Virus record (IMG/VR): IMGVR_UViG_3300009104_001827
Location: 147,118-211,117 of that record
Length of the DNA: 64,000 bases
Strand: one strand, 5' to 3'
Positions 13,588 through 64,000 of this stretch are shown here, one piece after another; positions within the stretch are counted from its first letter, which is position 1; each line of letters begins with the position of its first letter. The notes beneath the pieces were generated by a model. It saw nothing but the letters and a program-made list of their open reading frames with translations. It was not told the DNA's origin and ran no database searches. The position numbers and the translations under genes were made by a program.

Positions 13588-13596
13588 TATAAACAA

Positions 13597-15561: not shown

Positions 15562-15586
15562 CTTTTTGCCTCCCCGACAACACAAT
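15558..15586 (+). promoter_or_regulatory. Sigma70-type promoter, leaderless clpP
   Basis: TTGACT-17 nt-CACAAT; ATG at 15594. Confidence 0.65.
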
Positions 15587-15593
15587 ATATTGT

Positions 15594-53200: not shown

Positions 53201-56200
53201 GTATTGGTATTCAATTTTACTATTCATGCCGCCCAACAAAGAATCTGAATCGAGGAGCGACTCACTAATAATCCTTGATGCATACTCCACAGGTCGAACA
53301 AATACCCAAGATTCACTCACGCCAGGTACTTGGCCTGCGGGGATATCAGTATCGGCTTGCCACACATAGGTGCCATCGTGCACTGCCTCGTCAGCGGAGT
53401 AGGCCTGGTTGGAAAGCCACTGAGATGGTTCGCCGATCCTTATGTAGGGACTTTCCATAATCCCTGCGTATGTCAGTCCAAAATCAGAATAAGAATCGCC
53501 GGTGTTTATCGGCAACCTTAGGTATCTTCCTAAAACATTAGCATTGGACATAGAGGAAATAAACCCAGAGTAGGTCGTAAAGTTATTCCCGTCCGCCCCC
53601 TTTAGCTGGGGGATTAGTTTAATTGTTTGATTGGAATTGATGCTGATTTCCCCACCATCATATATTGCGCCATGATTTGGATGGCCAGTATCGGCGTTTC
53701 CTCCAGTATATATTTCAGTTGTTAACTCTATTGTTGGAGGGTATGACTCATCCTCTTTAACGAACTTAATTGGATTTACATCGCCCACTCCTCGACTATC
53801 GAGATTAAATCCTGCGTCGAGATTGAAGTCGATATCACTATCAATCGAGTCCACCCAACCCCTGAAGGCCCGTATGGCAGGATGCCTATCTTCATCTTGA
53901 TTATTCTCGTTAAGTGGGTGTGGAAGGTCTCCCGAAGAAAGGGTGTCGCCTTCTGCCCTCAGATCAACGTTCCAGTCCTCATAGTTAACACTTACATAGT
54001 CAAGCGATGCCAAAAACAAAGGGCTATCTGCATCCGGAACGCCGCCGACCCAAGTATCTATCATATGTGTTGTGGGATATTTTATTCTTGGAGTCCAGAA
54101 CTTCGCATTGTTGCCGGAGGCATCATAGGTTTTTAATCTTGGCCCAAAAATATCCAGCCTAGAGTTGAAGGCTTCAGACACGGCGTATTCGCTTGAACCT
54201 TCGGCCTTATGTATAAAATCAAAATCTCCTTCAGTTAAAAAGTATTGTGGCTCCACGCCAGCAGCGATCTCCTCTGAAGATGGATAGGTGCGATCAAGGT
54301 CAAATTCCCTACGCGCCACCGGCTGCCAATATTCACTAGGACGAATAACCAATGTATAGTTGCTCGTAAATCCACTCATAGTCCCGGAATTTATCGACAC
54401 GGGGAATTCGTAGATTTTTTTACCGACATACCCGGAAATGTCAGCCTTATATTGAAGGCCCTCTATAACGGTTGAGTTTTGCAAGTTCCCTTCCAAAACA
54501 AAATTATCATCCAATAGGGGAGTTGCATCCGAGACATAACAGAACTGTTTAATTTTAACCCGCCATTCATTGTCGTCCATTTTTACGGCGTCACCAATTC
54601 GATAGTAATTTTCATAGGTAAGATCATATGAATAATTATCCGAACCAAAGAGGTCCCTCTGTCGAATTTTGAATTTTCCATCCAATTCCTCCAACCCGTA
54701 ATATTGAGCGTAAGCCCTTCCTCGATTGTCATTATTTGCGGGATCGACATTAGGGTCAATGCGCTCTGCGGTAAATTCGTTCTCGGTAATTTCGAGCCAA
54801 GTCGTTTCGGCATATAAGTTCTTTCCTCTAAATCTGGAATATTGTAGATCTTCTACTAGGTTCGATAAAAAATACGCCGTCTCACTTGCGGACTCTTTTG
54901 GAAATATCCCAGGAACAATCCCCACACCGGCCGGATCTGCAGGAGAATCTGTATCCTTTATGCACTGAAAGCAATATGAGGCGACCGCTGCGTCTGCCTT
55001 AAGAAATAAAAACTCAGCACTATCCAAAAGGTTCGTATTCTCATCTGTGGGATAGCGCCCGGCCCACTCCTGGTAGGTCAGGCTTTCCCCCGAATTCGGG
55101 TCGACCATAGTAGGGGTTTTCTCCTTAAGTGTGACAAGATCTCCGACCTTGTAATTTTCGGCCTGCTCCATATCCCACGGAGCTATATCATACAATCTTT
55201 CAGACATTAATCCAAGTCCGCTTGCTCCATCAAGAGAATTAAACCACTGAAGTCCTAGCGTAATCCCCGATTTGTTATTCGGGGGAGAAGTAGATAGGCC
55301 CGTCTGTGACGACTTAAAGATTTTAACCCAACCATCGTAGAGGGTAATCTGAGTAACCATGGATAATGGTGAAATCGCGGTATTGCTGAGAATACTTAGC
55401 CTGGTCCACTTCTCTTTGTTTAAAATTGGATCGTTATCTGCCGATGCCCCCATCGAGACATTAGCCTTAAAGAATAAATTTAAATGTAATGGAAAAAAGT
55501 TTTCATTATCATTCTTTAGGGATTTGTAATATATTTTTGCTCCGTCGTCTTGATATACGTATACTGTGTTATGCTCGTTTCCCGGAGAAACCCATTCAGA
55601 ATATACTTTCTCTTGTCTCCAGGCATCACACGCGATTGCTGTGGTCACCTCCCACCAATCTTCCCGTGGGACCCTAGTCATATTGCCTCCGGAATATTCC
55701 TTGGTATCATTCCATTCAGGTATATTTGCCAAGGTCTGAACGTTGCCCTGGGGATTTCCCGTACGATCAACAGTTAAACTGAAAATAGATTCCTGCTGGA
55801 GGTCCGATCGCCCCAAATCTATAAAGTGTTTTGCCTCAAATAAATTTTGCGATGTATCCGCATCAATCGTAGTCGACAAAACCTGATTGCCATCGGCAGT
55901 AAGATCTTTAAACTTACTACCGTCAAAACCCTTAAAGCCAGTCTGAAGCAACCCTAATGCTGCACTAAACTCTGAATCCGACATCTCGTCAGTTCTTTTT
56001 AGAATAGGCAGAAAAGCGGCGTCAACGTGAGAATTGATAAATTTCTTGCCTTCATTCTCGATCTGATCTGCCCTGCCGAGCTTGTTGCCTAATATTAAAT
56101 AGTGACAGGGGTTGTCTCCACTAACCGAGGCGCTACCGGTTATAGTCTTAATTGAGAGCAATTTGGTCAAAGCCTGATCCTGGGTGCTGGACTCAAGTTC

Positions 56201-58039
56201 GTAGTCATAATCTACATTCGTTTTTGGTTGTCCATGATCTAAGCTCATCGAGCCCAGCGCCCCATGCCCGCCGACATACATATTGCCATTACTGAAAATT
56301 TGGGGCGTTACGAATTCGATTCTCTGCCGAGAAAGCACATCCTCGACCATCATGATATACTTGCCTAACTGTGTACTGCCCTTATTGGAGCCGGGGTGAA
56401 CACCCCCTCTTCTCCTCGCGTGAACATAGCCCCTCCTCATATAAAAAAATGGCGTAAGATCTCGATATTGAAAATGTAGAAGATCTCCCTCGGAGGCCAG
56501 GTCAGTATTAATATTGTTGGGGTTCAATATTCCCTGAAGATAACGATTTATGTCGGATCTGGATATTTGGGATGTAGAATATGTGCTAATCCCTGACGTG
56601 GAGCTGTAGGAGCTTAACTTTGTGGTCCTTCCAAAGGTGACCGCCAATCTAGGCTGCCCCCCATGATCCTTTCGGAGGGTTTTTGTATAAATAAATATAT
56701 CATATCCGCCATCTTGGTACGGGCCGCTTTCACTGCTGGCGCCAGAATACCATGACCGGCACTTATCCCTGCTATATCTTTTTAAGGGTTTTGCGAATTT
56801 CACCAATAAGTGACCGAAGATATTGGAAGACCCAGTAAAGTCTGCCATTCTTATGCGGCCCGCTTCTCGCTGTACGGGTTGGCCTGCTAGGTTTGTTTGG
56901 CCTTGGTACGAGCTATTATGGGCAAACTTTTTGATTTCAAATTTTTTCTCAGAGAAATATTTGTATATTGATGCAAGCGATGAATTTGGGCGATTAATTT
57001 GAGAGTCATACTTAACCCAATACTCATTAATCTCACCGCTTTCCGAACCGTACCATGGGGTTCTTTCGGAATTCCATGATCCGTTCGCATTAGAAGCGCT
57101 CGAGGGGTAAGTTTTAGCGGCCCCAACCTCTTTTTTGCACATGGCTAAGGAGGGAAATCCAATTAAATTAAACGTTTCCGTCCAGTTGGTTAAATCATCG
57201 ATGTTTGCCAGTCCAGATGGGGGATTATAGCTAACTATATCGCCAGGAAAATAAGTTAGGCCGGAATTCCACTGGCTAGACCCAGATATGTTGTCCTCGG
57301 CACTCATTTTTGCATCTAAAAAATCGAAGGAAGCCCCCATAACAGCATTAAGCGAAGTTGACGAAAATCCAAACCTCCTGTCGGGGAGCGCACTTATATC
57401 ATTGTCCCCAAACCCGTATTCAGGATAATCCACAATATATCTATCTATTATCTGCCCATCTTGCCCAGTTGCCGGTGAGGCCGTTCTTGCGGATCCGCCC
57501 CCAAAAGAAATTTCCGAAACGGGCCTTAATTGAATCGGGTTCTTAGATGAACCAGATTTGGGAATTAGACAAGAATAACACACTAGATATTTCATGTCAA
57601 TAAACTCTGATAAATTTAAACAAATTTCATTGTCGTGCATTATTCCTCCCGTCGCCCATTCACTCTTGGCATCAACCTCCCTCAAGCTCCCGGCCTCGCT
57701 AATTGAGTAGTCTTGTGCGAGTTCAGCGAAACTCTTAAAATAGGTATTAAAGTTTGCGTCAGATACTCCTGCTCCGGCACTCTTCAGGACGCAGACATAT
57801 AAATTAAATTGACTTGGTTTTGATCTAGATTTTCTATCCAAGAAATCGTCTGCGCCAGAGACCTTGTGAACAACCTGCCCCAAATCATAGTTTTTGTACG
57901 GCCTGAACCTTGCGTACCACACGGGGAGCGCCCCAGGAAGCCCAACCCTTGAAGCGCCGAAAAGTGTTCTTGTTGTCGATATGGTCGTGGGATCGGCAGA
58001 AAGAAAGTTTAAATTAAAATCTATGTTTACGCCACCCAT
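38270..58039 (-). CDS. Giant (6589 aa) fibre/adhesin with many CBM5/12-like modules, RCC1-like blades and galactose-binding-like domains
   Basis: Uninterrupted 19.8-kb ORF; about 15 W-x4/5-Y-x2-GD-x-V modules; RCC1-like repeats such as VEAGSDHILIRTASGKVFGVGDNS; Trp-rich. Confidence 0.85.
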   Translation of the reverse strand: MGGVNIDFNLNFLSADPTTISTTRTLFGASRVGLPGALPVWYARFRPYKNYDLGQVVHKVSGADDFLDRKSRSKPSQFNLYVCVLKSAGAGVSDANFNTYFKSFAELAQDYSISEAGSLREVDAKSEWATGGIMHDNEICLNLSEFIDMKYLVCYSCLIPKSGSSKNPIQLRPVSEISFGGGSARTASPATGQDGQIIDRYIVDYPEYGFGDNDISALPDRRFGFSSTSLNAVMGASFDFLDAKMSAEDNISGSSQWNSGLTYFPGDIVSYNPPSGLANIDDLTNWTETFNLIGFPSLAMCKKEVGAAKTYPSSASNANGSWNSERTPWYGSESGEINEYWVKYDSQINRPNSSLASIYKYFSEKKFEIKKFAHNSSYQGQTNLAGQPVQREAGRIRMADFTGSSNIFGHLLVKFAKPLKRYSRDKCRSWYSGASSESGPYQDGGYDIFIYTKTLRKDHGGQPRLAVTFGRTTKLSSYSSTSGISTYSTSQISRSDINRYLQGILNPNNINTDLASEGDLLHFQYRDLTPFFYMRRGYVHARRRGGVHPGSNKGSTQLGKYIMMVEDVLSRQRIEFVTPQIFSNGNMYVGGHGALGSMSLDHGQPKTNVDYDYELESSTQDQALTKLLSIKTITGSASVSGDNPCHYLILGNKLGRADQIENEGKKFINSHVDAAFLPILKRTDEMSDSEFSAALGLLQTGFKGFDGSKFKDLTADGNQVLSTTIDADTSQNLFEAKHFIDLGRSDLQQESIFSLTVDRTGNPQGNVQTLANIPEWNDTKEYSGGNMTRVPREDWWEVTTAIACDAWRQEKVYSEWVSPGNEHNTVYVYQDDGAKIYYKSLKNDNENFFPLHLNLFFKANVSMGASADNDPILNKEKWTRLSILSNTAISPLSMVTQITLYDGWVKIFKSSQTGLSTSPPNNKSGITLGLQWFNSLDGASGLGLMSERLYDIAPWDMEQAENYKVGDLVTLKEKTPTMVDPNSGESLTYQEWAGRYPTDENTNLLDSAEFLFLKADAAVASYCFQCIKDTDSPADPAGVGIVPGIFPKESASETAYFLSNLVEDLQYSRFRGKNLYAETTWLEITENEFTAERIDPNVDPANNDNRGRAYAQYYGLEELDGKFKIRQRDLFGSDNYSYDLTYENYYRIGDAVKMDDNEWRVKIKQFCYVSDATPLLDDNFVLEGNLQNSTVIEGLQYKADISGYVGKKIYEFPVSINSGTMSGFTSNYTLVIRPSEYWQPVARREFDLDRTYPSSEEIAAGVEPQYFLTEGDFDFIHKAEGSSEYAVSEAFNSRLDIFGPRLKTYDASGNNAKFWTPRIKYPTTHMIDTWVGGVPDADSPLFLASLDYVSVNYEDWNVDLRAEGDTLSSGDLPHPLNENNQDEDRHPAIRAFRGWVDSIDSDIDFNLDAGFNLDSRGVGDVNPIKFVKEDESYPPTIELTTEIYTGGNADTGHPNHGAIYDGGEISINSNQTIKLIPQLKGADGNNFTTYSGFISSMSNANVLGRYLRLPINTGDSYSDFGLTYAGIMESPYIRIGEPSQWLSNQAYSADEAVHDGTYVWQADTDIPAGQVPGVSESWVFVRPVEYASRIISESLLDSDSLLGGMNSKIEYQYDEVSHKNSSILKIENNGSNIGLLEQLGDKLQVMPKWKNISGPEGEIAPWTHDQSFDTGDFTKELNILYYARRASSGVQPSLFESMWQRVDEWKNNLPYELGDIVYAKERGVVWNSNEDSGSLPTQNELSQSNDVMVFYSCLDAHNASGEPAGGVSPSAENILDSTHGESEYLLRPFDNMSNIFTNSGLNINISFEMQAVDGQSYMSSTKELTLSLFSNENPGGTQRKDVDLFNYAFNSPTVLRGNLGFVSEFKLGNSFAGLQNTAILPMSVKITNVSGAAPDVDADTYLDVNNAVSKTYAVSAGLGWQNRFMISNNKLYASGMDSSELGYLGISNYKKIDGKPETYYGSNLEWNLDTFGKHNMCAPLKDAQDDELQRVKIYANGTTDTLLDPEPDIDFVRSGGGNTVFITTDKKLYGFGKNENNSLGITDKSFNSSSDDPEDWGDWSHDLIDAEDRFDLLSYANFNHAAGDPIASNKNDPHLAGWATYLTKDHNRANPAPQWERMAWATFPLDWFDKTSAEQDSYLHNNVTWIPEEELYPAGVTPWWASQEQLKIAGRILPWYDNINFWKEGGIECVGFDKPDNRGVPKVVNTHFILNSEDYIPFARQARSGAEGAYDVSFSLDGTSEYAKSLSTMMIKPAWEFYGGTDTDNSATKKREHFVVAGFEGSKERHMAGAAVQNDRGWMVPAWLFPYRDNAEISNKLTSWNGISWPHGKFQNLYPTSQWDDGDRFNTTREWGTPDWNERSWWGHDKKYNGAREAAPWTDNESISWFKEREHLGERWVSIENALPEDEPGISPKWEYIGWPDLDLPYGGSHKNHCVIDYFHDSKTMTVSGTECLALAMYRLKDRANYSYMDRPSQHSLNNNDDNNLRANCLKLAANRNAPAVPFPVKLTDDNVVWASTNEHSTIYVTEDGDVKILGSIIGCKDIPVQGLDFHSEATHGEVRRADNVMFHGGSDTFDSFGDLTVNELWQNDNWGLIHHMTDRDPDPFAGGEAVKYGSLIQGNIAYGETWEPYIEHIDYVNGQYVSYSGSLWSKIGDQGAGAHTFPGVIPGEWNSVSESITPLVTQDAASTNFDNLNNNYLHKYWPNTGPAYVATDSNGLNPDVKRIAEEDWGSIEFFGGNVIRQDGTTISDPSVGIAGSYRKVDLPSPTGGYPVYRHVANVDNLIWFYNGYWRASTATYYNSNEFDKQYAKGAVTTTVDKTPADVAVWSVLTQRESHKEINIYNTGVQFGGQYSSDSKKDTAWSVQPNGVLPATANDPLYPAAWIPNNLIPGNWLDAPEGSSWVGVWWSEQGGVPTLWPQATPVFYQAFHLDEGIDVSQVTVSFDFAVDNTMLDIQIHSEAGWHSINPDLVTGEEWETTSYLTNWDFNKSMLGYAGGNGHQYLFGWRPLFPDNWTANVWLWLEDHPDFVDNNGNPKYTTYWHDHARKSGEQQILPGVTKWGTFWGENNDRDGFGNTATSWFGASGSNLDEELRDHGMHYPAYEQLNQTTHYVAQTLELHLDNHGNRFEYLSNLLDKSYDYSRPNHPTTWDNSNKPSLSDLACMGVYNFAKVVIIQDNCSAWGSRQLGYDTEPGVMRSKYGGANYYWGLQSHVETGGLSGAARLHLVPWGYDYTPNTYGFGGHKDSGSLNPSVNEYVQLGTWNPDKLGGAGFTQWHQGSELSAERYGPNYPKPLTVGQKYEVRFFVSYRTAYSEPDVGAIIWAWEGGVPTATVDNLEAVQGGNLVNDYAGSGHQAIDVGDLGSGWTETKFTFVATHTSHSVEFICHTTSSDSTAFIYSVSCKPVTAAWYGGWFGELNSIDIGPQGIGASNIFRAGAGAAGNNALVMYVKNAGNVNNPAGLLVTNLTINAPLLLGYGAEIWTEDAEVKTEYRIQHRAGNGIGGAAGKLSTDMVTGILPYPLEDYEQKEDYAGYTWYGDQTDWDYYMNVWTDVADAREELYPWMTGEEYAKLHWAGPLTEADRATRYGAIRHKSTLERRTLAKSEWFRNKYVSQTYMRDWVEDPILGHTFLARASQAANNKLTSLGKTGGNWYYTAKYGQWIYITDAEKTKKEDGERFECFMSGIDIDFTEISSNAENYGVGNALFPVIDGEIVGKLAFTGTGTGWRKDSGIFFHIYVRPSSGIVLRTIKPEILTQGRWGVMYSPGKTTDARTAGDWSTIVQTRYGMISYNDHRVVWSILDDGPPDVRAYADGVAGETGTGYDQDKVMAASAWTWPENNGGGHHEDLDPPLVLAQGYHTFYMWEYDWGQPTGWGLLGDEGKFRYLLSAEIGGAAVNEEFHDSGDIVFHAGWILDNDAIYGSNLPGIGSWENHIKYSPRGFSGFFDYTAAAGMGEDPEYQGSTISKSSYNEGDIVTAQVADGDDLFGTLVFVSMKDDNTSDIGFSESLERVDGKKWSMPAPKAITKTYDLSTNSLADIEDEISSTTLTPEPHTLYDHEDYGSDKALQVEAGSDHILIRTASGKVFGVGDNSLQQIDWRNKTGGIESDFDLGDRLGRESGKGFYKLEGTAPSSLNPIYDPSWSAIEQPALPPEKWAYGKTYQPGSRVWIDHVSHVVYVGPGEGVEGTLLQEHLQISIPSITENGGLETLPPETLKSDWADTNKLGKWQKPDVEVLTFGSIGEAMHALVNQENGAGGTLGSTGLSGWFPLGKLGMMPNDGATHTFPSSEIKMPRTANFKLYKKAFGDTHFCTREIFIKPHLISHGNNNNQAVELDEIIAVAASGNNSLILSQSGNLFGTGENKISGSDRDEYEGRSLGNALGLESEFLDGPEFIFPNVEFISLQGDCATFISEGRSYKCGGVGLRPYLENYSFKGAPAVILDDASGREGEPIIAKQVFMDSFGFWSKPKRRIRKWPQFIDGKLCRKGSKDIRDKVLPEINRLADAWVSNKSYRTSLPSGHSQLLNGQPNTLFHHGYGSDMVAGSNADQAGSAFIGREPDFVTHKGTIYQCIKDHFFSFEPGSSLGELYWRESSASMINVNPIQYFYREWQLDRWATISYVNESGELFSKGFQVMYAPDSSGDIIGGKSYTSLRTNASTWADERISGWHLDLDHAGVGVTSQVDYGGSGTMYLYYGGQDNEYLGTAGSIFGESVNPFYGDSNTNIVNEKNLLDTEYIDFTHNLLGSFVSGSNAPTGITVTWTNMLSHVVSLAWGDASCGWGSLDPFAPSFIRDFNFKSWPTAGQLDLIDLFSNASEHGWNNYYFPGVVNHANNSQNPPDGMYNWWQVMGEMSVSQWAPALPTHHPRGALDAFKFMNRFTGDETYSWKPAGSISEVPDMATAGNEGEYHPDIKWPIYSKIERYSEAATDTWGLHSSFGDSLAYTFGYSIFGGNFNDRFNDDAWIVGDFDTTKAESSQFGVKDEPKNPRLTAASGRGSLTKILGLQTGALTQGCPEVIPDSVFSLLLQGHLEYRRINFPSTAMFGAWMCDPWSLPFGDKAHQSWKSQFSLLVGQENQGVGENVSWGWLDPNSNTMTKLGKYHNHGLVGDAISHDNYTFLKPGDRFNFGGTVYRMHWRVEEGQGGIEGGAPIPNGTYIAPDKDGAGAGKTGYSSMWSVDRLEKEHRWRTQIGIMHQTMELGQKWGGDPYKRFLRGYATSIGHSQIYTGFAEKIGGHCALAWADRGDKAGKVSLAVDYRNYSAGLDQRQPDNFSGLGEFDVFDVPGWNQRTSDNKETIELTDTQGYTFINREVPSPTYWQRYLPAGAEQLEGLDAGNGYSVWDWVFALNQLRQGWDWTQRLEVWIGVNFGSYPTFTLAGQVFSSGNQLPHRRQSQGAPHTAPGISNYEHWLAFLAQQGAGSLNRYAGFYKFPQRAVDFGFGPMTDVMEAYGQLKRHGMNNFTIGPDEAHSWRGRENQMDSYCSQSKRSSQYNELAVTDLTNIPVGECMNWLWENDISAGDIISIQDHRSPKRNRRLWRAYNDIPSGTIKYGDFPKAGTKFIQSWWTDLFQEILDWDSSTWYRHGDRVIYKGNLWLMPHDWAKDWGDWGDPATDNYNRGLGIRGDDTMPGTTGVWKSSIEDGAGTKPHWVIGNHHGGPDNQVSDGGTPGDGGCTSHNQGADQNPEKFALYSAKDMIENWKDRPYTARHNRELRFELAERFINAEEIDEYNPLASTIYAPEIIWAKDIELGKRYTVVFPGWDREWVNGELHETIDDWVDEFGEEWEEWTFDLPNGYWPTGAGDSIRQYMLNFASGTSELGLGIGELEHRGDSSFIAKKSGWNVLSADALWYGGQVGHDWGLFNVYNSIMFFHPWRMFDWRPTWGEYGRVSAADWETMTNGLPAMYRPYYASEPGTAAQPAGSGPLGESLYRSAYTNASLPHCAGDVILSDGDLFLAKNCGSHGVGAAWDTCAIYAFWHLGSYEPFPPPSESKSRWQEEYDDKISDGLSPTVLDPIYRNVPGESTMGGAEDHPMMWGDYRIATQADVDAGANSSINTPPTEVGDAFGKVDWSGAKKVTNQFLPDSSNGPMWLGEAYDQPLLRKKSWERLLRKLHPSLQMSGWGFGNNLEPGAWGGCQVRPYSPPGYYRGDLVKTQDGGVWKVWRFNEEGGSASGYGTGDDAPGGANNKWEYIGENGDSLGWLLTGAKGAFYSESYLDSGNKQELTKWYINAEAGSDNILKGSTDIYDSEDVSITCRGSKMFASRDAAINWVIRRAKEREKLGFSWYDHKTRKWVAGRNWLWENINLERIWDYGGWELSEGGKPEGAGDNADIYVTMTPRTQYYPGDRAWWKGELYECQAFLRLNSSDEFTTHLGAGTSYVVGASNPWNAYNPDGRWGGTPVGDSVFPYTNHSLPHVDGEHIPPWWVKSGGGTFKLPVVGFDDYDGSHDNSKHQGAAGVREGSNLAGTMSIFPNDYFDTQEEAEAFARNPQVASNYSDSNTFQPGGPYKGHPGFTDADLIEITTEYCDKYGAAGVDGDCEVIYIGGAAHSQCLARMRGICDSWEEKIGNALPGGTIIPNGELFLSILGSAKWKDSWEDTGNKVDTD

Positions 58040-58554
58040 TACTTGCTAAAAATTACCTTTGAATATTTATCGTCTATGGGTTCTATTTTTCCACCCATAA
58101 ACTTTAGCCATCTAATACCGAGGCTATTATCCGCCTCAACAATATTAACCAAATGATCAAATTCTTCCCCAAACAGCCAATCAAAATGCTCTCTGGATAT
58201 TCTCATAAATTCATATACTGCAAACATAGCTTTAAGGTTGCCAAATGACTTAAAAAAGTCGCTCTTAGATTTAATCATGTCCAGAGAATTCCTAGAGCCG
58301 AGCACCCAGACCTGACCTATGCGTTCTTGAGGGGAATGGGCGACCCCGGTGGAGCCGATATATGTTTCGTCTTTTAAGCAAAAGCTAATTGTTCGAATTG
58401 ATCTGTTGAAGGTTTCATAAACATGCTTTTCGTGGTTTGGCCACCCGAGATAATCCGAATGTCGCGAGTCCACGTTCCTTGGATTCAATGATAGCTCGAT
58501 AATATCTGAGTCGATGACATCCCTGACATAACCGTGTTTTCCTAATATTTTCAT
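58039..58554 (-). CDS. GNAT-fold acetyltransferase, DUF2833/T7 gp13-like
   Basis: GQVWVLGS, LVNIVEADNSLGIRWLKFMG; TAATG-coupled to the giant gene. Confidence 0.7.
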   Translation of the reverse strand: MKILGKHGYVRDVIDSDIIELSLNPRNVDSRHSDYLGWPNHEKHVYETFNRSIRTISFCLKDETYIGSTGVAHSPQERIGQVWVLGSRNSLDMIKSKSDFFKSFGNLKAMFAVYEFMRISREHFDWLFGEEFDHLVNIVEADNSLGIRWLKFMGGKIEPIDDKYSKVIFSK

Positions 58555-58573: not shown

Positions 58574-58611
58574 TACACTAAATAGTTATAGGTCCCAACA
58601 ATATAAGTGTA
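58574..58611. promoter_or_regulatory. Back-to-back GTGTA motifs at a divergent junction
   Basis: TACAC 58574-58578 (19 nt before ATG 58554) and GTGTA 58607-58611 (44 nt before ATG 58656). Confidence 0.55.
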
Positions 58612-58655: not shown

Positions 58656-59255
58656 ATGAGAATTTCGCACAAAAACAAATGGATCTTCCTGTCGTCATCC
58701 AGAACCGGCTCCACTTCTACTCGTAAAGCATTAGATAAATTTAGTGACATAAAGTCGGTGCATTATTCTAAATGCGAAGAAGAGCAAAATCCATTCTATA
58801 ACCATATAAGCTTAAGGGAGGTTCAATCTATATTCAAGCATGATAATATAGACTTCAAATCATACACAACATTTACTGCGGTACGCAATCCATGGGACAG
58901 GGCGTTATCTTTGTATTTTCACTCTCAACAAATTATGCATAATCCTGCCCCCACCGCATTTAGCGATTGGATAAAAAAAGTACAAGCCAGAGGCCCTTTA
59001 TATGGTCAAATTTACAACCAGTGCTTAGATGATAAAAATCAATATGCGATAGATTCTATAATCAGGTTTGAGCATATGCAAAAAGACTTCAATGTTGTTT
59101 GCGACAAAATAGGGATCTCAAGACAACAACTTCCACACGTAAATGCAACCAAACACAAACACTACACCGAATACTATAACTATGAAACCCATGAAATCGT
59201 TGCCGAAAAATACGCAAAAGATATTGAACATTTCGGATATGAATTTGGAGATTAA
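58656..59255 (+). CDS. Sulfotransferase family 2 protein
   Basis: ISHKNKWIFLSSSRTGSTS (5'-PSB), VRNPWDRALSLY (3'-PB), IIRFE. Confidence 0.85.
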   Translation: MRISHKNKWIFLSSSRTGSTSTRKALDKFSDIKSVHYSKCEEEQNPFYNHISLREVQSIFKHDNIDFKSYTTFTAVRNPWDRALSLYFHSQQIMHNPAPTAFSDWIKKVQARGPLYGQIYNQCLDDKNQYAIDSIIRFEHMQKDFNVVCDKIGISRQQLPHVNATKHKHYTEYYNYETHEIVAEKYAKDIEHFGYEFGD

Positions 59256-59257
59256 AA

Positions 59258-59842
59258 ATGATAAGTCACAAACATAAATTTATTTTTGTTCATATCAATA
59301 AAACTGGAGGTACGAGTATTGAAGTGTTATTAAAGAAGTATTCAAACAAATTTGAAAAACATCAATCAATTATTGACTTAAATAAAGAAGCATCTTCTAA
59401 CGATTATTTTAAATTCACTTTCGTAAGAAACAGTTGGGATAGATTCTTATCCTTGTACAAATACCGAATAAAAACAAACCAAACAAAGCTTGGTAGTAAT
59501 CCCATACCCTTTAAAGAATGGGCAAAACATATCTATGATAAGAACCCGAAATATTACAATACTCCTAACAAATTTAAACTTCTTATGTTATCAGATCAAC
59601 TTGACTGGATCACAGATGCAAATGGTAGTGTGAACATGGATTTCATCGGAAGATTTGAAAACCTCCAAGAAGACTTTAATATCGTGTGTGACAATATTGA
59701 AATTCCACATTCACAACTTCCACATATAAACAAAACTGAACACAAACATTATACCGAATATTACGATGAAGAAACAAAGCAAATCGTTGCCGAAACATAC
59801 GCAAAAGACATTGAGTATTTCGGATATAAATTTGGAGATTAA
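59258..59842 (+). CDS. Sulfotransferase family 2 protein
   Basis: FVHINKTGGTSI, VRNSWDRFLSLY, FIGRFENL. Confidence 0.88.
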   Translation: MISHKHKFIFVHINKTGGTSIEVLLKKYSNKFEKHQSIIDLNKEASSNDYFKFTFVRNSWDRFLSLYKYRIKTNQTKLGSNPIPFKEWAKHIYDKNPKYYNTPNKFKLLMLSDQLDWITDANGSVNMDFIGRFENLQEDFNIVCDNIEIPHSQLPHINKTEHKHYTEYYDEETKQIVAETYAKDIEYFGYKFGD

Positions 59843-60478
59843 ATGATTACTTTTATTCACATAGGAAAATGCGGCGGCACTACAATCAAAAGAACACTGA
59901 TAGATAATGCTGTTAAATTTAGGCATATTCACCTTAAACGTCCTGAGCATGAGCCTGACTCAAAATATCTTATTGCATTGAGAAATCCAGTAGAGCGTTT
60001 TATTTCAGCGTTCTATTGGCGCAGATTTTTATTACTCAGCGGTCAAGAAGCTGGAGGAAAAGAGCTAGAATTTTATAAAGAGTATAAAGATTTGAACAAC
60101 GTATGCGAGCATCTTTTTGACGAGAACAGCAACTTAAATCCATTGATTGACTCGAAAATTCACCAACATTATACATGCGGACACCCCTCTCATGTAGGCA
60201 TGGGCATCGATTATTATATTGGAGGCATAACAAGAGAACTGACTCCGAAAAATGTTTTTGGCGCGATATGCACTGAAACACTCTCTCAAGATATGAAAAG
60301 ACTGTTTGACGTTGAAGTTACCAGGCATGCTAGAAAAAATTCTGCGAACAAGTTAGAAACAACACAGCAATCAAGATTTCTCTTAAAGAAATATTTAGCA
60401 AAAGACTATCAATGTATTGATAAATTATATTTATCGAATATCTTATCCGAAGAGCAATACGAAATATTAAAAACATGA
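59843..60478 (+). CDS. Sulfotransferase family protein
   Basis: FIHIGKCGGTTI, LRNPVERFISAF. Confidence 0.82.
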   Translation: MITFIHIGKCGGTTIKRTLIDNAVKFRHIHLKRPEHEPDSKYLIALRNPVERFISAFYWRRFLLLSGQEAGGKELEFYKEYKDLNNVCEHLFDENSNLNPLIDSKIHQHYTCGHPSHVGMGIDYYIGGITRELTPKNVFGAICTETLSQDMKRLFDVEVTRHARKNSANKLETTQQSRFLLKKYLAKDYQCIDKLYLSNILSEEQYEILKT

Positions 60479-60484
60479 AAAAAA

Positions 60485-61816
60485 ATGATTAGCCATAAAC
60501 ATAAATATATATTTGTCCATATCCCTAAATGCGGAGGAAGCAGCACGGAACTATCCCTGCTTGAGGCGGAGGGCGTGGATTGTAGCGATGCCAACGAAAT
60601 AAACCAATTACCCGAAGATATACTGAGTACATATTTCATGAACAATGATCTTGCCATGGAACCCCAACACTATACGCTTGAAGAATATCCGGAGTATTTT
60701 CAAAAAGAATATTTTTGTTTTACAATAATAAGGAATCCGTGGGAGATTTGGGTTAGCGAGTACCATCACGAATTGAGGGTCAGGAAAAGACTGGGCAGAC
60801 CTAAAGTCACTTTTGAGGAGTTTATACGGAAGAATAAAGGCTTCAAGTATCACCTTCGAAGCCAAATGGATTTCATTAATCAAAACATGGACTATGTAGG
60901 TAGAATGGAGAGTATAGATTCTGACTTTATGGAAATATGCGACAAATTAGGTATTGACGCTCAGCTGAAACACAGAAACAAAGGAAAATACGAAAATCAT
61001 TACAGCGAATACTACAACGAAGGGATTCTATCTCTTATAAATTCACACAATTCCCTCCTAGGATCAACTGGAAAACTTGATGCGCAACTTATGGGGTACG
61101 AGAGTAATCCCGGCAATCCAAAGAGTGAAAACGAAGAAAATCCCCACGAAGCAACAATGGACAATGTCTTCTTTATTAATCTCGACAGTAGAAAAGACCG
61201 AAAAGAGCTCGTAGAGAATGAACTCAACGAGCTAAATTGGTCTTATGAGAGATTCCCCGGAACCAAAACTTCTGACGGAAGAATAGGGGCGACGATAAGC
61301 CACATAGGAGCGCTAGAGTTGGCTGCGGCGAGAGATCTGGATTACGCCGTAATTTTAGAGGATGATATCCACTTTAGGGATAAAGCTTTATTTTTGCGCC
61401 AGCTCAAAAAATGCCTAAAGGAGATCAATGACTTTGATGTATTACTTCTTGGGGGGCAGATTGGGCCAAAAGACGAGAGAATTACCGAATACGCGTTTAA
61501 ATTAAAACACTGCGTAACCGCAACGGGCTATATAGTTAACAAGCATTACTACAAGCGATTCCTTGAGCACTCGAAGAAAGGGCTTAATTTATTAATTGAA
61601 AACCCATCAGGGATCCGAAGTCAAAATCAATATGCATTTGATATTTATTGGTGGGAATTGCAGGAAAGGGATAAATGGTACATGGTCGCTCCCGCCTGCG
61701 TAGAACAAAGGGATGGATTTAGCGACATCAGAGAACAATATACTGACCACAGAAAATTATTCACAACCGCCTGGAAGGAGAAATCTCACCTAATTAATAC
61801 AAAGGGATATTGCTAA
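60485..61816 (+). CDS. Sulfotransferase-GT25 glycosyltransferase fusion
   Basis: N-half HIPKCGGSS and IRNPW; C-half FFINLDSRKDRK, GATISH, VILEDD, TGYIVN, QRDGFSDI. Confidence 0.85.
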   Translation: MISHKHKYIFVHIPKCGGSSTELSLLEAEGVDCSDANEINQLPEDILSTYFMNNDLAMEPQHYTLEEYPEYFQKEYFCFTIIRNPWEIWVSEYHHELRVRKRLGRPKVTFEEFIRKNKGFKYHLRSQMDFINQNMDYVGRMESIDSDFMEICDKLGIDAQLKHRNKGKYENHYSEYYNEGILSLINSHNSLLGSTGKLDAQLMGYESNPGNPKSENEENPHEATMDNVFFINLDSRKDRKELVENELNELNWSYERFPGTKTSDGRIGATISHIGALELAAARDLDYAVILEDDIHFRDKALFLRQLKKCLKEINDFDVLLLGGQIGPKDERITEYAFKLKHCVTATGYIVNKHYYKRFLEHSKKGLNLLIENPSGIRSQNQYAFDIYWWELQERDKWYMVAPACVEQRDGFSDIREQYTDHRKLFTTAWKEKSHLINTKGYC

Positions 61817-61818
61817 TT

Positions 61819-62532
61819 ATGAGTAAAATCTGCATACCCAAAGTAGCCTGGTTATACTGGGACAAGGGCTGGAGCAATGCCCCAACCATAGTTCGAGCGT
61901 GCAGAAATAGGCTAACCAGAATCAACCCCGACTGGACCTTTCATTTTTTGTCCGACGAAAATTTAGATGAATTTATTAATTTAGATGGACTTGGGAATAT
62001 TCCTGTGCAGGCGAAGTCTGACGCGATAAGAATCCTTCTTCTTGAGAAGTTTGGGGGAATATGGCTAGATGCAACATTGTACGTTAATCTACCCCTTGAT
62101 GAGTGGCTGTGGGATAATTTAGGGCAGGAGTTTTTTGCTTTTAGCAATCCTCGTAAAAACTTCGGCAGGATTGTCTCGAGCTGGTTTCTTGCGGGAAGAA
62201 ATGACAACTATATTATAAATAAATGGAAGATCGAAACCTTAAAATATTGGGAAAATAGAGAAGAGGCCGATCAATATTTTTGGTTTCATAATCTATTTAA
62301 AGAAATGTACGATAAAGATGAAAAATTCAGCCTCCTTTGGGATAGGACTAACAAGATTGATTGCGATGTTGGCACAAGACAAGGGCCTCATTTTTTTGCC
62401 CCATATACAGACGAAATACTTAAATCAATAGCGTCGCAGGAAGTCCCCGCTTCTCCAGTATTTAAATTGACCTGGAGAGTAGACCTATTGAAATCTCCTG
62501 TCATTCAAGAATTATTCAAAGATGATATGTAG
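61819..62532 (+). CDS. GT32/capsular polysaccharide synthesis-type glycosyltransferase
   Basis: IPKVAWLYWDKG, SDAIRILLLEKFGGIWLDA, YFWFH, VFKLTW. Start may be 61810 or 61819. Confidence 0.85.
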   Translation: MSKICIPKVAWLYWDKGWSNAPTIVRACRNRLTRINPDWTFHFLSDENLDEFINLDGLGNIPVQAKSDAIRILLLEKFGGIWLDATLYVNLPLDEWLWDNLGQEFFAFSNPRKNFGRIVSSWFLAGRNDNYIINKWKIETLKYWENREEADQYFWFHNLFKEMYDKDEKFSLLWDRTNKIDCDVGTRQGPHFFAPYTDEILKSIASQEVPASPVFKLTWRVDLLKSPVIQELFKDDM

Positions 62533-62616
62533 AATAAACGCAATGCGGGTAGGTTAAAAATATTATATATAATATGCACATCTATTCAAAGAAAGCAACC
62601 TACCAATCTTCGATTA

Positions 62617-62621
62617 GTGTA
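62617..62621 (+). promoter_or_regulatory. GTGTA motif
   Basis: GTGTAATATAAATTTATAGAA-ATG(62638). Confidence 0.55.
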
Positions 62622-62637
62622 ATATAAATTTATAGAA

Positions 62638-63360
62638 ATGAAGGTCCTACAATATTCATATCCCCGCAGCGGCTCTACCGTAGTCTGGAATATTCTAGAG
62701 GATCTCCTCTCCCCCGAGAACACAGAAAATAAAGATAGATTCTTTTATCCAGCGAACGTGATTAAGACACATGACCTAAGGTACTTTAGACAATTCTATG
62801 CATTCAAAGGAAAAATTAAATTCTACAATATTGATTATAAATGTGGCCTCCTGGTATCTACGATTCGACACCCAATAACAAATTGTCTTTCACTGTTAAG
62901 GGTAGGAATGGTAGGGGCGTCCCCAGATAAACCTTCTGTATCAAAAGCACAAGGAAAAGAAGAAGTTACAAATGAAACAATTACATTAAAATTACAAAAC
63001 TATATTAACCATTACGAATGGATGTTAAAACAATTAAAAGAAAAATCAAGCAAAAGAAATACAATCCTCTTTGATTATGACCAACAAATAAAACCAATTA
63101 AGCCTATACTGAATACATTAGAGGGGAAGCTAGGAATACTCATTTTAAATAAAGAAGATAAAATTAAATACTTCCTACCGCCGACCTTAATGGATCATGG
63201 ACTCGATAAATTTGACCAACAAGACAATTCCACCTTAATGCACGGAGAGCATGTAAAATCAAATAAATACCCAATTGAGCACGAAATTTTAGCTTTAGAA
63301 AATCCTTTAATTGAAAAAGCGACAGAACTCTATCTTGAGCTTCGCGAACAATATACTTAA
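62638..63360 (+). CDS. Sulfotransferase-like P-loop protein
   Basis: SYPRSGSTVVWNIL, VIKTHD, TIRHPITNCLS. Confidence 0.72.
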   Translation: MKVLQYSYPRSGSTVVWNILEDLLSPENTENKDRFFYPANVIKTHDLRYFRQFYAFKGKIKFYNIDYKCGLLVSTIRHPITNCLSLLRVGMVGASPDKPSVSKAQGKEEVTNETITLKLQNYINHYEWMLKQLKEKSSKRNTILFDYDQQIKPIKPILNTLEGKLGILILNKEDKIKYFLPPTLMDHGLDKFDQQDNSTLMHGEHVKSNKYPIEHEILALENPLIEKATELYLELREQYT

Positions 63361-63364
63361 CACT

Positions 63365-64000
63365 ATGGAATATACACTTATATTAAATTATTACAATAAG
63401 TCAAAAGAATTATTGATCAAACAACTTAATGCTGTATCAAAACAAACCATTAAGCCCAAATTAATATGGGGCTGCTTCATGGGGTGTGAAGATGACGAAT
63501 TATTGCACACATATCAAGAAATAACAAAAGACTGGGATAATGCCTGCTTTATAGATTCCGATTATAATTTTAAATATATAGGAAGATATCAACTAGCCCT
63601 TACAGCTCCTACGGAAATAATCGTTATGCTTGATGACGACAGAATCCCTAATCCACAATATTGCGAATGCATGATCAAGATTGTTCGCAATGAGGAATGT
63701 CTTGTACAGCAGTACGGATGGCAATTGGATAAAAGGCCAGGTGGAGAAATACAACTTAAAAAACAAAAAATCCCCCGCCCAGTAGATTTTGTAGGTAAAT
63801 ATTCAAGCCCATACGAAGAATGCAATTCAAGATACAGGAAAGAAACGCCTATACTTGCTCAAGCGGATTACCTTTGTGGAGGAATGGTTTTTAGGAAATC
63901 TTCATTAAAGTACCTTTTTCAAGAAGATATATATACCACAGCAACAGGAGAAGACATTATGTTTTGTCTAAGATGTAAAAAAAATAACATCCCTGTTTAT
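63365..64000 (+). CDS. GT-A (GT2-like) glycosyltransferase, 3'-truncated
   Basis: Not in the ORF track; reads MEYTLILNYYNK...LNAVSKQTIKPK...NFKYIGRY...IVMLDDDRIP...ADYLCGG...TGEDIMF to the window end. Confidence 0.8.
   Translation, partial: MEYTLILNYYNKSKELLIKQLNAVSKQTIKPKLIWGCFMGCEDDELLHTYQEITKDWDNACFIDSDYNFKYIGRYQLALTAPTEIIVMLDDDRIPNPQYCECMIKIVRNEECLVQQYGWQLDKRPGGEIQLKKQKIPRPVDFVGKYSSPYEECNSRYRKETPILAQADYLCGGMVFRKSSLKYLFQEDIYTTATGEDIMFCLRCKKNNIPVY

What the first reader, a model, noticed from the sequence alone, without database searches (positions are those of the whole stretch)
58656..64000. Sulfated-glycan synthesis cluster divergent from the glycan-binding giant fibre operon
Seen: five sulfotransferase domains and three glycosyltransferase domains (GT25 fused to a sulfotransferase, GT32-like, GT2-like), none with a signal peptide, sharing a back-to-back GTGTA junction with the fibre operon. 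Inference: late cytoplasmic synthesis of a sulfated glycan that decorates virion proteins (Ser/Thr-rich fibres) or alters the host surface for superinfection exclusion. The fusion suggests coupled elongation and sulfation.
Basis: partly seen in the sequence, partly recalled or inferred. Interest (0 to 1): 0.6.

Follow-up and report, generated by a model that had tools for sequence, protein, structure and literature searches.

The report
Phage island for making sulfated glycans
A 212-kb marine jumbo phage carries eight adjacent genes encoding six sulfotransferase and three glycosyltransferase domains, which most likely build a sulfated sugar chain inside the infected cell; what phage sulfotransferases do is still unknown.

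Summary
The window is the last 64 kb of a 211,117-bp marine virus record. Other assemblies bridge the record's end to its start across a 694-bp gap, giving a circle of 211,811 bp.

The complete island has eight same-strand genes: ST1, ST2, ST3, an ST-GT25 fusion, GT32/Caps_synth, a sixth gene (ORF6), GT2 and ST6. Pfam gives ORF6 no family. Relatives, a confident model and fold matches show it is a sulfotransferase. The island therefore has 6 sulfotransferase (ST) and 3 glycosyltransferase (GT) domains. None has a membrane or signal segment.

GTGTA is a real upstream motif. It is depleted genome-wide and about 6-fold enriched before genes. It stands before ST1, before ORF6 and before the divergent giant-ORF operon.

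The phage has no genes for PAPS (the sulfate donor), sugar nucleotides, flippase or polymerase, and no base-hydroxymethylating enzyme. Two related jumbo phages hold a different GT/ST/methyltransferase island in the same slot, with an APS-kinase-like gene beside it. Other viral contigs fuse ST-GT25-GT2-GT32 in one chain. ST arrays are common in uncultured viral contigs.

Sulfated-glycan synthesis is well supported. The acceptor is unresolved; I lean to a phage protein over the host envelope. "Ser/Thr-rich fibre" is not supported.

The parts
58574..58578 (-). GTGTA promoter-like motif (context TTTAGTGTATAAA on the minus strand), 24 nt before the start of the 171-aa gene and giant-ORF operon
   Evidence: Sequence read. 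Motif statistics and positions.
58607..58611 (+). GTGTA promoter-like motif (context ATAAGTGTAAAG), 49 nt before the ST1 start codon
58656..59255 (+). ST1, 199 aa, Sulfotransfer_2-type sulfotransferase; Arg replaces Lys in the 5'-PSB loop
   Evidence: Pfam PF03567 7.5e-9. phrog_3347 7.9e-21. Motifs in alignment A1.
59258..59842 (+). ST2, 194 aa, Sulfotransfer_2-type sulfotransferase; 49% identical to ST1
   Evidence: PF03567 1.7e-20. phrog_3347 1.6e-26..
59843..60478 (+). ST3, 211 aa, divergent Sulfotransfer_2-type sulfotransferase
   Evidence: PF03567 2.4e-5, 25.1 bits against a cut-off of 22, N-terminal part only. An iterated search from ST3 recovers the whole ST family in the viral loci. 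Both PAPS motifs are present.
60485..61816 (+). ST4-GT25 fusion, 443 aa: Sulfotransfer_2 domain (about aa 1-190) and GT25 glycosyltransferase domain (about aa 225-443)
   Evidence: PF03567 2.6e-11 and PF01755 1.3e-15. phrog_3347 and phrog_2835. The same domain order occurs in L074 and L088.
61819..62532 (+). GT32-like glycosyltransferase (Caps_synth / Gly_transf_sug), 237 aa from the ATG that gene callers use; the open frame runs from TTG 61810
   Evidence: PF05704 2e-39 and PF04488 1.3e-5. Gene calls.
62617..62621 (+). Second GTGTA promoter-like motif inside the island (context GATTAGTGTAATATAAA), 21 nt before ORF6
62638..63360 (+). ORF6, 240 aa, sulfotransferase of the Sulfotransfer_1/3 type; N-terminal YPRSGST loop, then KTH, then R-H-P...S
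   Evidence: No Pfam hit. ESM Atlas score 0.97 to sulfotransferase clusters. Relatives hit PF13469 and PF00685. Model with pLDDT 88.9. Foldseek PDB hits are all sulfotransferases.
63365..64000 (+). 5' part (212 of 284 codons) of a GT2-family glycosyltransferase, cut by the end of the record. The rest of this gene and ST6 (203 aa) lie in L005 13517-14364. That stretch is the 694-bp gap plus the first ~154 bases of the record.
   Evidence: Full-length PF00535 24.3 bits against a cut-off of 23.3. 56 relatives, many carrying PF00535. ST6: phrog_3347 3.3e-22 and PF03567 in the gene calls.
58039..58554 (-). Context: 171-aa gene, first gene of the divergent operon; weak similarity to an 'internal virion protein' family
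   Evidence: phrog_308 2.4e-10. No Pfam hit. 58-60% identical homologues in L187 and L188 at the same position.
38270..58039 (-). Context: 6589-aa giant ORF, the candidate acceptor protein. Its function is unknown and it is not shown to be a fibre.
   Evidence: About 35% identical homologues in L187 and L188.

Best explanation
The island is a glycan-building and glycan-sulfating toolkit that depends on PAPS and works in the cytoplasm of the infected cell. Three glycosyltransferases (GT25, GT32-like, GT2) add sugars. Six diverged sulfotransferases (five Sulfotransfer_2-type, one Sulfotransfer_1/3-type) put sulfate on different positions. The phage makes neither PAPS nor sugar nucleotides, so both donors come from the host. 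The island is read from GTGTA-type promoter-like sites of the same class as the one before the divergent 171-aa and giant-ORF operon. It is therefore probably switched on together with that operon. My preferred acceptor is a phage-made protein, most likely the neighbouring 6589-aa protein or another virion protein. Particles, or that protein, would then leave the cell carrying a strongly anionic sulfated glycan. Shown: the domain identities, the intact cofactor motifs, the soluble nature of the enzymes, the gene order, the recurrence of the motif, purifying selection, and the conserved slot. Inferred: enzymatic activity, timing, and above all the acceptor.
For: Domains and motifs.

Evidence that the ST and GT activities work together:
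- The ST-GT25 fusion is present here.
- One viral contig fuses ST-GT25-GT2-GT32 in a single 1120-aa chain, and another has ST-GT25-Sulfotransfer_4.
- Metagenomic relatives carry GT32+ST, ST1+ST2 and GT10+GT25 fusions.

Glycan context elsewhere:
- Of 76 other IMG/VR loci with this ST family, 59 have two or more STs and 26 have three or more within 8 kb either side.
- These loci co-occur with UDP-galactopyranose mutase (19 loci), GT2 (17 loci), GDP-mannose 4,6-dehydratase (13 loci) and GT90.
- Huge phage LR756508 has the order GT25-ST-ST-ST-GT25.
- Ralstonia phage RSL1 has one ST next to an APS kinase and several GTs.

PAPS link: relatives L187 and L188 carry an APS-kinase-like gene beside their island.

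Evidence for a protein acceptor:
- In three phages whose shared proteins are only 35-60% identical, the slot between HSP20 and the 171-aa/giant-ORF operon always holds a GT+ST island, although its content has turned over.
- In L187 and L188 a DUF2827 gene abuts the operon. This phage has two tandem DUF2827 genes behind a GTGTA site.
- DUF2827 proteins are described as cytoplasmic putative glycosyltransferases found next to giant trimeric autotransporter adhesins (bioRxiv 10.64898/2026.01.22.700529).
- The phage has no priming transferase, flippase or polymerase. Only one polytopic membrane ORF exists in the whole genome.

Selection and expression:
- pN/pS is 0.11 against a Tara Oceans variant (27 synonymous, 12 non-synonymous changes), and all frames are intact.
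- Five near-identical contigs of a marine metatranscriptome lie on the island.
Against: - No enzyme activity, glycan or virion composition has been measured.
- The giant ORF is not Ser/Thr-rich and has not been shown to be a virion or surface protein. The 171-aa neighbour resembles an 'internal virion protein' family, which would argue against surface display.
- The conserved slot could simply be a hot spot for gene insertion at a divergent promoter.
- GT25 and Caps_synth are named for lipooligosaccharide and capsule synthesis. This fits a host-envelope acceptor at least as well.
- In other phages ST islands sit next to non-structural genes: ribonucleotide reductase in L074 and thymidylate-synthase-family and sigma-factor genes in RSL1.
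- The RNA-library contigs cannot prove transcription.
- Most GTGTA-preceded genes have no annotation, so 'late' timing is not established.
Confidence: 0.45

Rival explanations
1. Host-envelope remodelling. The soluble GTs and STs act at the cytoplasmic face of the inner membrane on the host's own lipid-linked intermediates (lipooligosaccharide core, O-unit or capsule repeat). The host's flippase and exporter carry the altered, sulfated glycan to the surface. There it blocks superinfection or stops progeny from sticking to debris.
For: - The GT25 and Caps_synth/GT32 families are defined on LOS and capsule enzymes.
- Bacterial relatives of these STs sit with other STs and GTs, for example four STs plus GT61 and GT2 in Aphanothece.
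- Marine bacteria make sulfated capsules from clusters of STs and GTs (PMC11641403).
- The phage lacks export genes, which it would not need if it used the host's.
- From my own knowledge, not tested here: cyanomyovirus P-SSM2 carries LPS-type gene clusters.
Against: - No membrane-associated component is present, unlike known seroconversion modules.
- The island keeps its place beside the giant-ORF operon in three diverged phages.
- DUF2827 genes, linked in bacteria to glycosylation of giant adhesins, accompany the operon.
- The host is unknown, so no acceptor glycan can be named.
Confidence: 0.3
2. Non-glycan acceptors. Some or all of the sulfotransferases sulfate something other than a sugar, such as protein tyrosines (as TPST and RaxST do), a lipid or a small metabolite. 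The GTs would serve a separate purpose.
For: - ORF6 has the PRSGST-type loop of the Sulfotransfer_1/3 group. That group includes small-molecule and tyrosine sulfotransferases, and its fold hits include cytosolic SULTs.
- Substrate cannot be read from these families.
Against: - Five of the six STs are Sulfotransfer_2-type, and one is covalently fused to a GT.
- Fusions of ST with GT25, GT2 and GT32 recur.
- Sugar-nucleotide enzymes co-occur with ST arrays.
Confidence: 0.1
3. DNA hypermodification. The GTs glycosylate hydroxymethylated bases of the phage DNA and the STs sulfate the attached sugars, protecting the genome from host nucleases.
For: - In Ralstonia phage RSL1 the ST lies with GTs annotated as HMC glucosyltransferases, an APS kinase and a thymidylate-synthase-family gene.
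- A relative of the GT2 sits between DNA polymerase III alpha and dCTP deaminase in another marine phage.
- Phage GTs are known to decorate DNA with diverse glycans (bioRxiv 10.1101/2023.12.21.572611, listed).
Against: - This phage has no thymidylate-synthase/hydroxymethylase homologue and no TET/JBP dioxygenase at E<=0.1. No route to a hydroxymethyl base was found.
- As far as I know, sulfated DNA has never been reported.
Confidence: 0.05
4. Passenger cassette. The island is a recently acquired, mobile set of genes with no role in infection, or with decayed activity.
For: - Island content differs completely between this phage and L187/L188.
- One ST6 allele is 4% diverged in some samples.
- GC content is lower here (35-39%) than in the neighbouring giant ORF (44-50%).
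Against: - All eight frames are intact in every assembly seen.
- pN/pS is 0.11.
- Cofactor motifs are kept in all six STs.
- Phage-type promoter-like motifs stand before two of the genes.
- The closest ST relatives are viral (up to 54% identity) rather than bacterial (44% at most).
Confidence: 0.05

Closest known systems
Bacterial sulfated capsular polysaccharide clusters (e.g. Vibrio sp. KMM 8419, Cobetia marina KMM 1449; PMC11641403, PMC11766843)
   Same: They combine several PAPS-dependent sulfotransferases with glycosyltransferases. Sulfation is thought to occur in the cytoplasm during assembly.
   Different: Those clusters also encode PAPS synthesis (cysNDC), sugar-nucleotide synthesis and an ABC or Wzx exporter. 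The authors call the pairing of PAPS genes with STs the hallmark of such clusters. This phage has none of these genes.
Ralstonia jumbo phage RSL1, ORF232-238 island
   Same: A jumbo phage with a Sulfotransfer_2-type gene (24% identical to ST2) embedded among glycosyltransferases.
   Different: RSL1 has one ST, its own APS kinase, two nucleotidyltransferases and an adjacent thymidylate-synthase-family gene. It has no ST array and no ST-GT fusion. Its function is also uncharacterised.
Huge phage LR756508 (484 kb, uncultured)
   Same: It has the order GT25 - ST - ST - ST - GT25 on one strand. This is the same two families in tandem.
   Different: The domains are separate genes rather than a fusion. 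GT32, GT2 and Sulfotransfer_1/3 members were not detected nearby. The record is unannotated and unstudied.
Mycobacteriophage virion glycosylation (Freeman et al. 2023, cited in PMC12619734) and glycosylation by chloroviruses and mimiviruses (my own knowledge)
   Same: Virus-encoded soluble glycosyltransferases decorate virion proteins in the cytoplasm, using host sugar nucleotides.
   Different: No sulfation is known in those systems. The acceptor here is unproven. The GT families differ.
DUF2827 putative glycosyltransferases next to trimeric autotransporter adhesins (bioRxiv 10.64898/2026.01.22.700529)
   Same: Cytoplasmic DUF2827 genes, often in two or three tandem copies, lie beside genes for very long surface proteins. 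Here there are tandem DUF2827 copies in the phage, and one copy abuts the giant-ORF operon in L187 and L188.
   Different: That association is in bacteria and is itself only a proposal. In this phage the DUF2827 genes lie about 60 kb from the island.
Single sulfotransferase 'auxiliary metabolic genes' reported in marine and glacier viromes (PMC10580990, PMC8290583)
   Same: Phage-borne PAPS-type sulfotransferases whose role is stated to be unclear.
   Different: Those are lone genes, mostly Sulfotransfer_3. Here six STs from two families are interleaved with and fused to GTs.

Membership tests
PAPS-dependent sulfotransferase, Sulfotransfer_2 (PF03567): ST1, ST2, ST3, ST4 N-domain, ST6 | Match to the family profile above the curated cut-off | tested here: met
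   36.5, 74.6, 25.1 and 44.6 bits against a cut-off of 22. ST6: PF03567 in the precomputed gene calls and phrog_3347 3.3e-22. The ST3 match covers only the N-terminal part.
PAPS-dependent sulfotransferase, Sulfotransfer_2 (PF03567): ST1, ST2, ST3, ST4 N-domain, ST6 | 5'-phosphosulfate-binding loop (K/R-x-G-x-T/S-T/S) near the N-terminus and 3'-phosphate-binding motif (R-x-x-x-x-x-x-x-S) | tested here: met
   Alignment A1. The loop is KTGGTS, RTGSTS, KCGGTT, KCGGSS or KNAGTS. The second motif, RNPWDRxxS or a variant, is present in all five.
PAPS-dependent sulfotransferase, Sulfotransfer_2 (PF03567): ST1, ST2, ST3, ST4 N-domain, ST6 | Sulfate transfer from PAPS to an acceptor | not testable with these tools
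   Needs an enzyme assay.
Sulfotransferase, Sulfotransfer_1/3 type (PF00685/PF13469): ORF6 | Match to a family profile | tested here: not met
   There is no Pfam hit for ORF6 even at E<=10. A profile comparison with the Sulfotransfer_2 paralogues is not significant.
Sulfotransferase, Sulfotransfer_1/3 type (PF00685/PF13469): ORF6 | Homologues that belong to the family; sulfotransferase fold; conserved PSB loop, His and 3'-PB residues | tested here: met
   6 of 13 relatives hit PF13469 and 4 of 13 hit PF00685. The model has pLDDT 88.9. The 41 PDB matches at E<=0.001 include only sulfotransferases among those listed. R10, G12, T14, K43, H45, R77, P79 and S85 are invariant.
Glycosyltransferase family 25 (PF01755): C-half of the fusion | Profile match over the cut-off; acidic EDD motif | tested here: met
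   58.2 bits against a cut-off of 24. 'ILEDDI' is present in the translation.
GT32-like (Caps_synth PF05704 / Gly_transf_sug PF04488) | Profile match over the cut-off; the conserved sugar-binding region | tested here: met
   136.1 bits against 24.5 and 26.2 bits against 23. The motif reads SDAIR...GGIWLDAT.
Glycosyltransferase family 2 (PF00535) | Profile match over the cut-off; DxD motif | tested here: met
   The match is marginal: 24.3 bits against 23.3 on the full-length protein and 23.0 on the truncated frame. The DDD motif is present. Many of the 56 relatives carry PF00535.
Complete bacterial sulfated-polysaccharide gene cluster | PAPS synthesis genes (ATP sulfurylase, APS kinase) in or near the cluster | tested here: not met
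   None in the whole phage genome. An APS-kinase-like gene is present only in relatives L187 and L188.
Complete bacterial sulfated-polysaccharide gene cluster | Priming transferase, flippase, polymerase or ABC exporter | tested here: not met
   Only one ORF in the genome has more than three hydrophobic segments, and it resembles none of these. This is a hydropathy screen, not a family search.
Phage DNA glycosylation system | An enzyme that makes a hydroxymethylated base (thymidylate-synthase-type hydroxymethylase or TET/JBP dioxygenase) | tested here: not met
   PF00303 and PF12851 give no match at E<=0.1.
Virion protein glycosylation system (mycobacteriophage type) | Glycan attached to capsid, tail or fibre proteins | not testable with these tools
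   Only positional evidence is available. The island abuts the giant-ORF operon in three phages.

The most novel reading that the evidence does not exclude
The phage coats a giant virion protein with a densely sulfated glycan that imitates the sulfated polysaccharides of marine algae and particles. Bacteria that feed on such polymers would then bind the particle through their own polysaccharide-capture receptors. Under this reading the Tat-exported DUF1501 (sulfatase-like superfamily) protein encoded elsewhere in the window would belong to the same sulfated-glycan biology. This would be the first sulfated viral glycan in prokaryotes and a new adsorption strategy.
Probability: 0.07. Interest if true: 0.9.

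Novelty: new variant of a known kind. Interest (0 to 1): 0.6.

Why it matters
Lone sulfotransferases have been listed among viral auxiliary genes, but a 2023 paper states that their function in phages remains unclear (PMC10580990). The paper library holds no article that uses the phrases 'phage-encoded', 'viral' or 'virus-encoded sulfotransferase'.

This locus, together with the many multi-ST arrays found in uncultured viral contigs, points to a widespread and unstudied capacity of marine phages to make sulfated glycans. That would matter in three ways:
- If the product sits on virions, it would be a new kind of particle surface chemistry. It would change charge, stickiness to marine gels and receptor use.
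- If the product sits on the host, it would be a new form of surface conversion by lytic phages.
- The compact soluble enzymes and natural ST-GT fusions are also candidates for making defined sulfated oligosaccharides in vitro.

Tried and rejected
- DNA similarity to 50,697 phage records: no match.
- Sequence search of ORF6, GT2 and ST2 against solved structures: nothing meaningful.
- First fold of ORF6 with three sequences: pLDDT 47, unusable. It was superseded by the 13-sequence model.
- Profile comparisons of ORF6 with the Sulfotransfer_2 paralogues and with the L187 sulfotransferase: not significant. Pairwise BLASTP aligned only the 3'-PB motif region (E 0.003).
Sugar-nucleotide genes are also absent.
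- DNA-modification reading: no thymidylate-synthase-type or TET-type enzyme, so ranked low.
- Annotating the other GTGTA-preceded genes to fix the timing: eight of ten had no PHROG hit, so 'late' stays an inference.
- Sigma-70 promoter and intrinsic-terminator scans of the island: no more sites than in shuffled sequence.
Bacterial ST relatives are scattered over many phyla at 44% identity or less. The host is left open.
- Metatranscriptome contigs lie on the island. The tool warns that DNA may be present in such a library, and I could not lay a control stretch, so expression is not claimed.
- A complex prediction between the enzymes and the giant protein was not run, because no defined pair of touching domains could be proposed.

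Full report
**Where the window lies.** The window is bases 147,118-211,117 of a 211,117-bp IMG/VR virus record that CheckV rates complete. The record ends inside a gene. A 98.8-kb contig of the same virus (L005) matches the last 13,516 bases of the record at 100%. It then carries 694 bases the record lacks, and then matches bases 1-7,119 of the record. A 211,917-bp JGI contig of the same virus has a 106-nt overlap between its two ends. The genome therefore assembles as a circle of 211,811 bp, and the cluster is internal, not terminal. The phage occurs in marine metagenomes from several studies, including Tara Oceans assemblies. The rest of the window encodes replication genes, a ClpB-like ATPase, a large terminase, PhoH and a sigma-factor-like protein. 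Tail-fibre genes lie elsewhere in the genome.

**The observation.** Eight genes lie on the plus strand with gaps of 0-105 nt.
- ST1 (58656-59255), ST2 (59258-59842) and ST3 (59843-60478).
- An ST-GT25 fusion (60485-61816).
- A GT32-like Caps_synth protein (61819-62532).
- ORF6 (62638-63360).
- A GT2 protein (63365 onwards, 284 aa, cut by the end of the record).
- ST6 (203 aa, across the junction).

Pfam and PHROGs support all of these except ORF6. ORF6 starts with a YPRSGST loop but has no family hit. A search of 1.8 billion representative proteins gave 13 relatives. Six of them match Sulfotransfer_3 and four match Sulfotransfer_1. With these as the alignment, the model reached pLDDT 88.9. Every listed PDB match is a sulfotransferase, including heparan sulfate 2-O-sulfotransferase, SULT1C2 and plant SOT16/18. 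The residues expected for PAPS binding and catalysis are invariant in the family.

A sixth sulfotransferase lies just beyond the window. None of the eight proteins has a hydrophobic stretch compatible with a signal peptide or membrane helix.

**The GTGTA junction.** The 101-bp spacer between ST1 and the divergent 171-aa gene has GTGTA once in each orientation, 49 and 24 nt before the respective start codons.

This is not chance. The pentamer occurs only 105 times on both strands of the genome, against about 412 expected. It is found in 15 of 91 oriented upstream regions against 2.5 expected. The usual context is TTAGTGTAA, 14-50 nt before the start codon. A third copy lies 21 nt before ORF6, inside the island.

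Other genes with the motif include:
- a 528-aa gene next to the terminase;
- a 587-aa gene beside the tail-fibre genes;
- the first of two tandem DUF2827 genes.

A second, distinct class of sites (CTTGACA, 17 nt, TAnnAT) looks like host sigma-70 promoters. It precedes about 25 mostly small genes in the 4-56 kb region, plus the ribonucleotide reductase and helicase genes. The island therefore shares a phage-specific promoter-like class with the giant-ORF operon. Whether that class is 'late' could not be settled, because most of its genes have no recognisable family.

**What the phage lacks.**
- There is no APS kinase, ATP sulfurylase or PAPS reductase family member.
- There is no epimerase/dehydratase or sugar nucleotidyltransferase.
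- There is no thymidylate-synthase-type hydroxymethylase or TET/JBP dioxygenase.
- Only one ORF in the genome has several membrane segments, and it resembles no flippase, polymerase or priming transferase.

The enzymes must therefore use host PAPS and host sugar nucleotides. They have no export route of their own, and no route to a glycosylatable DNA base was found.

**Comparative evidence that this is glycan chemistry.**
- The ST family is rare in cultured phages. Five of 50,697 records have it: Ralstonia phage RSL1 (two records), Stenotrophomonas phage DLP6 and two huge uncultured phages.
- In RSL1 the ST sits with an APS kinase, three GTs and two nucleotidyltransferases.
- In the 484-kb phage LR756508 the order is GT25-ST-ST-ST-GT25.
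- The family is common in uncultured viral contigs. 372 stretches were confirmed.
- Of the 76 best non-self loci, 59 have at least two STs, 26 at least three and two have eight within 8 kb either side. In 39 loci two STs are directly adjacent.
- The gene families that most often accompany them are UDP-galactopyranose mutase, GT2, GDP-mannose 4,6-dehydratase, a PfkB sugar kinase and GT90. In one T4-like lineage the neck and sheath-stabiliser genes also accompany them.
- The ST-GT25 fusion recurs. One contig (L074, from a phage that shares many genes with this one) encodes ST-GT25-GT2-GT32 as a single 1120-aa chain. Another (L088) encodes ST-GT25-Sulfotransfer_4.
- Metagenomic relatives include GT32+ST, ST1+ST2 and GT10+GT25 fusions.

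Such fusions are strong evidence that these activities act on one product.

**A conserved slot.** Two other jumbo-phage contigs (L187, 204.9 kb; L188, 126.9 kb) have the 171-aa gene at 58-60% identity, followed by a homologue of the giant ORF at about 35%. In both, the space between the HSP20 gene and the 171-aa gene holds an island of different composition:
- three methyltransferases, one of them TylF-like;
- GT34 and GT2;
- a Sulfotransfer_1/3 protein;
- a GT32-like protein;
- a DUF2827 protein.

An APS-kinase-like gene lies just beyond HSP20. The slot therefore always carries glycan-tailoring genes, including sulfation, while the genes themselves have been exchanged.

DUF2827 proteins are described as cytoplasmic, probably glycosyltransferases. 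In bacteria they are found, often in tandem, next to genes for very long trimeric autotransporter adhesins. This phage has two tandem copies just upstream of the window and a third copy elsewhere.

**Selection and expression.** Against a Tara Oceans variant (99.2% identical DNA) the island shows 27 synonymous and 12 non-synonymous differences, giving pN/pS of 0.11. All frames are intact. Some samples carry an ST6 allele that is 4% diverged while the rest of the island is identical. A marine metatranscriptome holds five contigs that are at least 99% identical and scattered over the island. This is compatible with transcription but does not prove it.

**Interpretation.**
- I regard cytoplasmic, PAPS-dependent synthesis or tailoring of a sulfated glycan as well supported, at about 0.8.
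- The acceptor is open. I lean to a phage protein, most plausibly the adjacent giant protein or another virion component (0.45 for the full statement). The reasons are the conserved slot, the shared promoter-like class, the DUF2827 parallel and the absence of any lipid-carrier or export function.
- The main rival is remodelling of host envelope precursors using host export machinery (0.3). The GT25 and Caps_synth families and the bacterial contexts of ST relatives fit it well.
- Non-glycan acceptors (0.1), DNA hypermodification (0.05) and an idle passenger cassette (0.05) are less likely.
The giant protein is not Ser/Thr-rich (14% S+T) and is not demonstrably a fibre or glycan binder.

**Novelty.** Phage glycosyltransferase islands and lone viral sulfotransferases are known. 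Arrays of sulfotransferases interleaved with and fused to glycosyltransferases have not been described in the papers I could search. No sulfated phage glycan is known to me. I file this as a new variant of a known kind, with interest 0.6.

Noticed in passing
window 12313-13587 (+): A 424-aa DUF1501 protein (Pfam 1.5e-86), a family I recall (not checked here) as belonging to the alkaline-phosphatase/sulfatase-like superfamily. It has a classical twin-arginine signal (MKRRTFIEVGAATGIG...). A phage-encoded, Tat-exported enzyme of this family is unusual. It may relate to sulfated-glycan biology or hint at the host.
   Followed up: partly
window 13597-15561 (+): A 654-aa protein with bacterial thrombospondin type-3 (calcium-binding) repeats, directly after the DUF1501 gene.
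   Followed up: no
whole genome; e.g. window 2599-2634 and 8230-8269: Two promoter-like classes. One is CTTGACA-N17-TAnnAT, about 36-40 nt before some 25 genes, mostly small genes at 4-56 kb of the record. The other is TTAGTGTAA, 14-50 nt before 15 genes. GTGTA is about four-fold depleted genome-wide.
   Followed up: partly
G000 144787-146996 (just upstream of the window) and 45369-46442: Three DUF2827 paralogues, two of them in tandem behind a GTGTA site. In relatives L187 and L188 a DUF2827 gene abuts the 171-aa/giant-ORF operon. The family is proposed elsewhere to glycosylate giant adhesins.
   Followed up: partly
window 38270-58039 (-): A 6589-aa ORF with only sub-threshold RCC1-repeat and CBM5/12 matches and no compositional bias. 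Homologues at about 35% identity occur in two other jumbo-phage contigs. The genome also has ORFs of 3810, 3032, 1649, 1606 and 1439 aa.
   Followed up: partly
L012/L013 5580-6191 (ST6); window 63354-63358: Microdiversity hot spots. One ST6 allele carries 25 differences (12 synonymous, 13 non-synonymous) while the other seven genes are identical. In-frame 9-nt insertions occur at the ORF6/GT2 boundary in other samples. These may explain why assemblies break here.
   Followed up: partly
L005 16386-16589 and 20425-20628; 20059-20205 and 21060-21206 (record bases about 2176-2379, 6215-6418, 5849-5995 and 6850-6996): Two pairs of 87-88% identical direct repeats lie just past the island. One pair lies in two paralogous small acidic proteins (about 100-110 aa).
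   Followed up: no
G000 122446-124338 (-): A 630-aa ORF with a sub-threshold GT1 (Glycos_transf_1) match (24.7 bits against a cut-off of 26.4), close to the 3' end of the 3810-aa ORF (two short ORFs lie between). It may be a further glycosyltransferase near a giant gene.
   Followed up: no
window 4143-6116 (+): The only polytopic membrane protein of the genome (about five hydrophobic segments, weak DUF4407 match), between the ribonucleotide reductase and UvsX-like genes.
   Followed up: no
L014-L016 (other marine phage contigs): The closest well-sampled relatives of the GT2 (54% identity) sit alone between DNA polymerase III alpha and a dCTP deaminase/dUTPase gene. The same GT family is therefore used in quite different genomic contexts.
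   Followed up: no
L179 (Aphanothece hegewaldii) 9292-16247: A cyanobacterial cluster of two Sulfotransfer_2 and two Sulfotransfer_1/3 genes with a TPR-GT61 protein and a GT2. This is a cellular counterpart of the mixed ST/GT arrangement.
   Followed up: no
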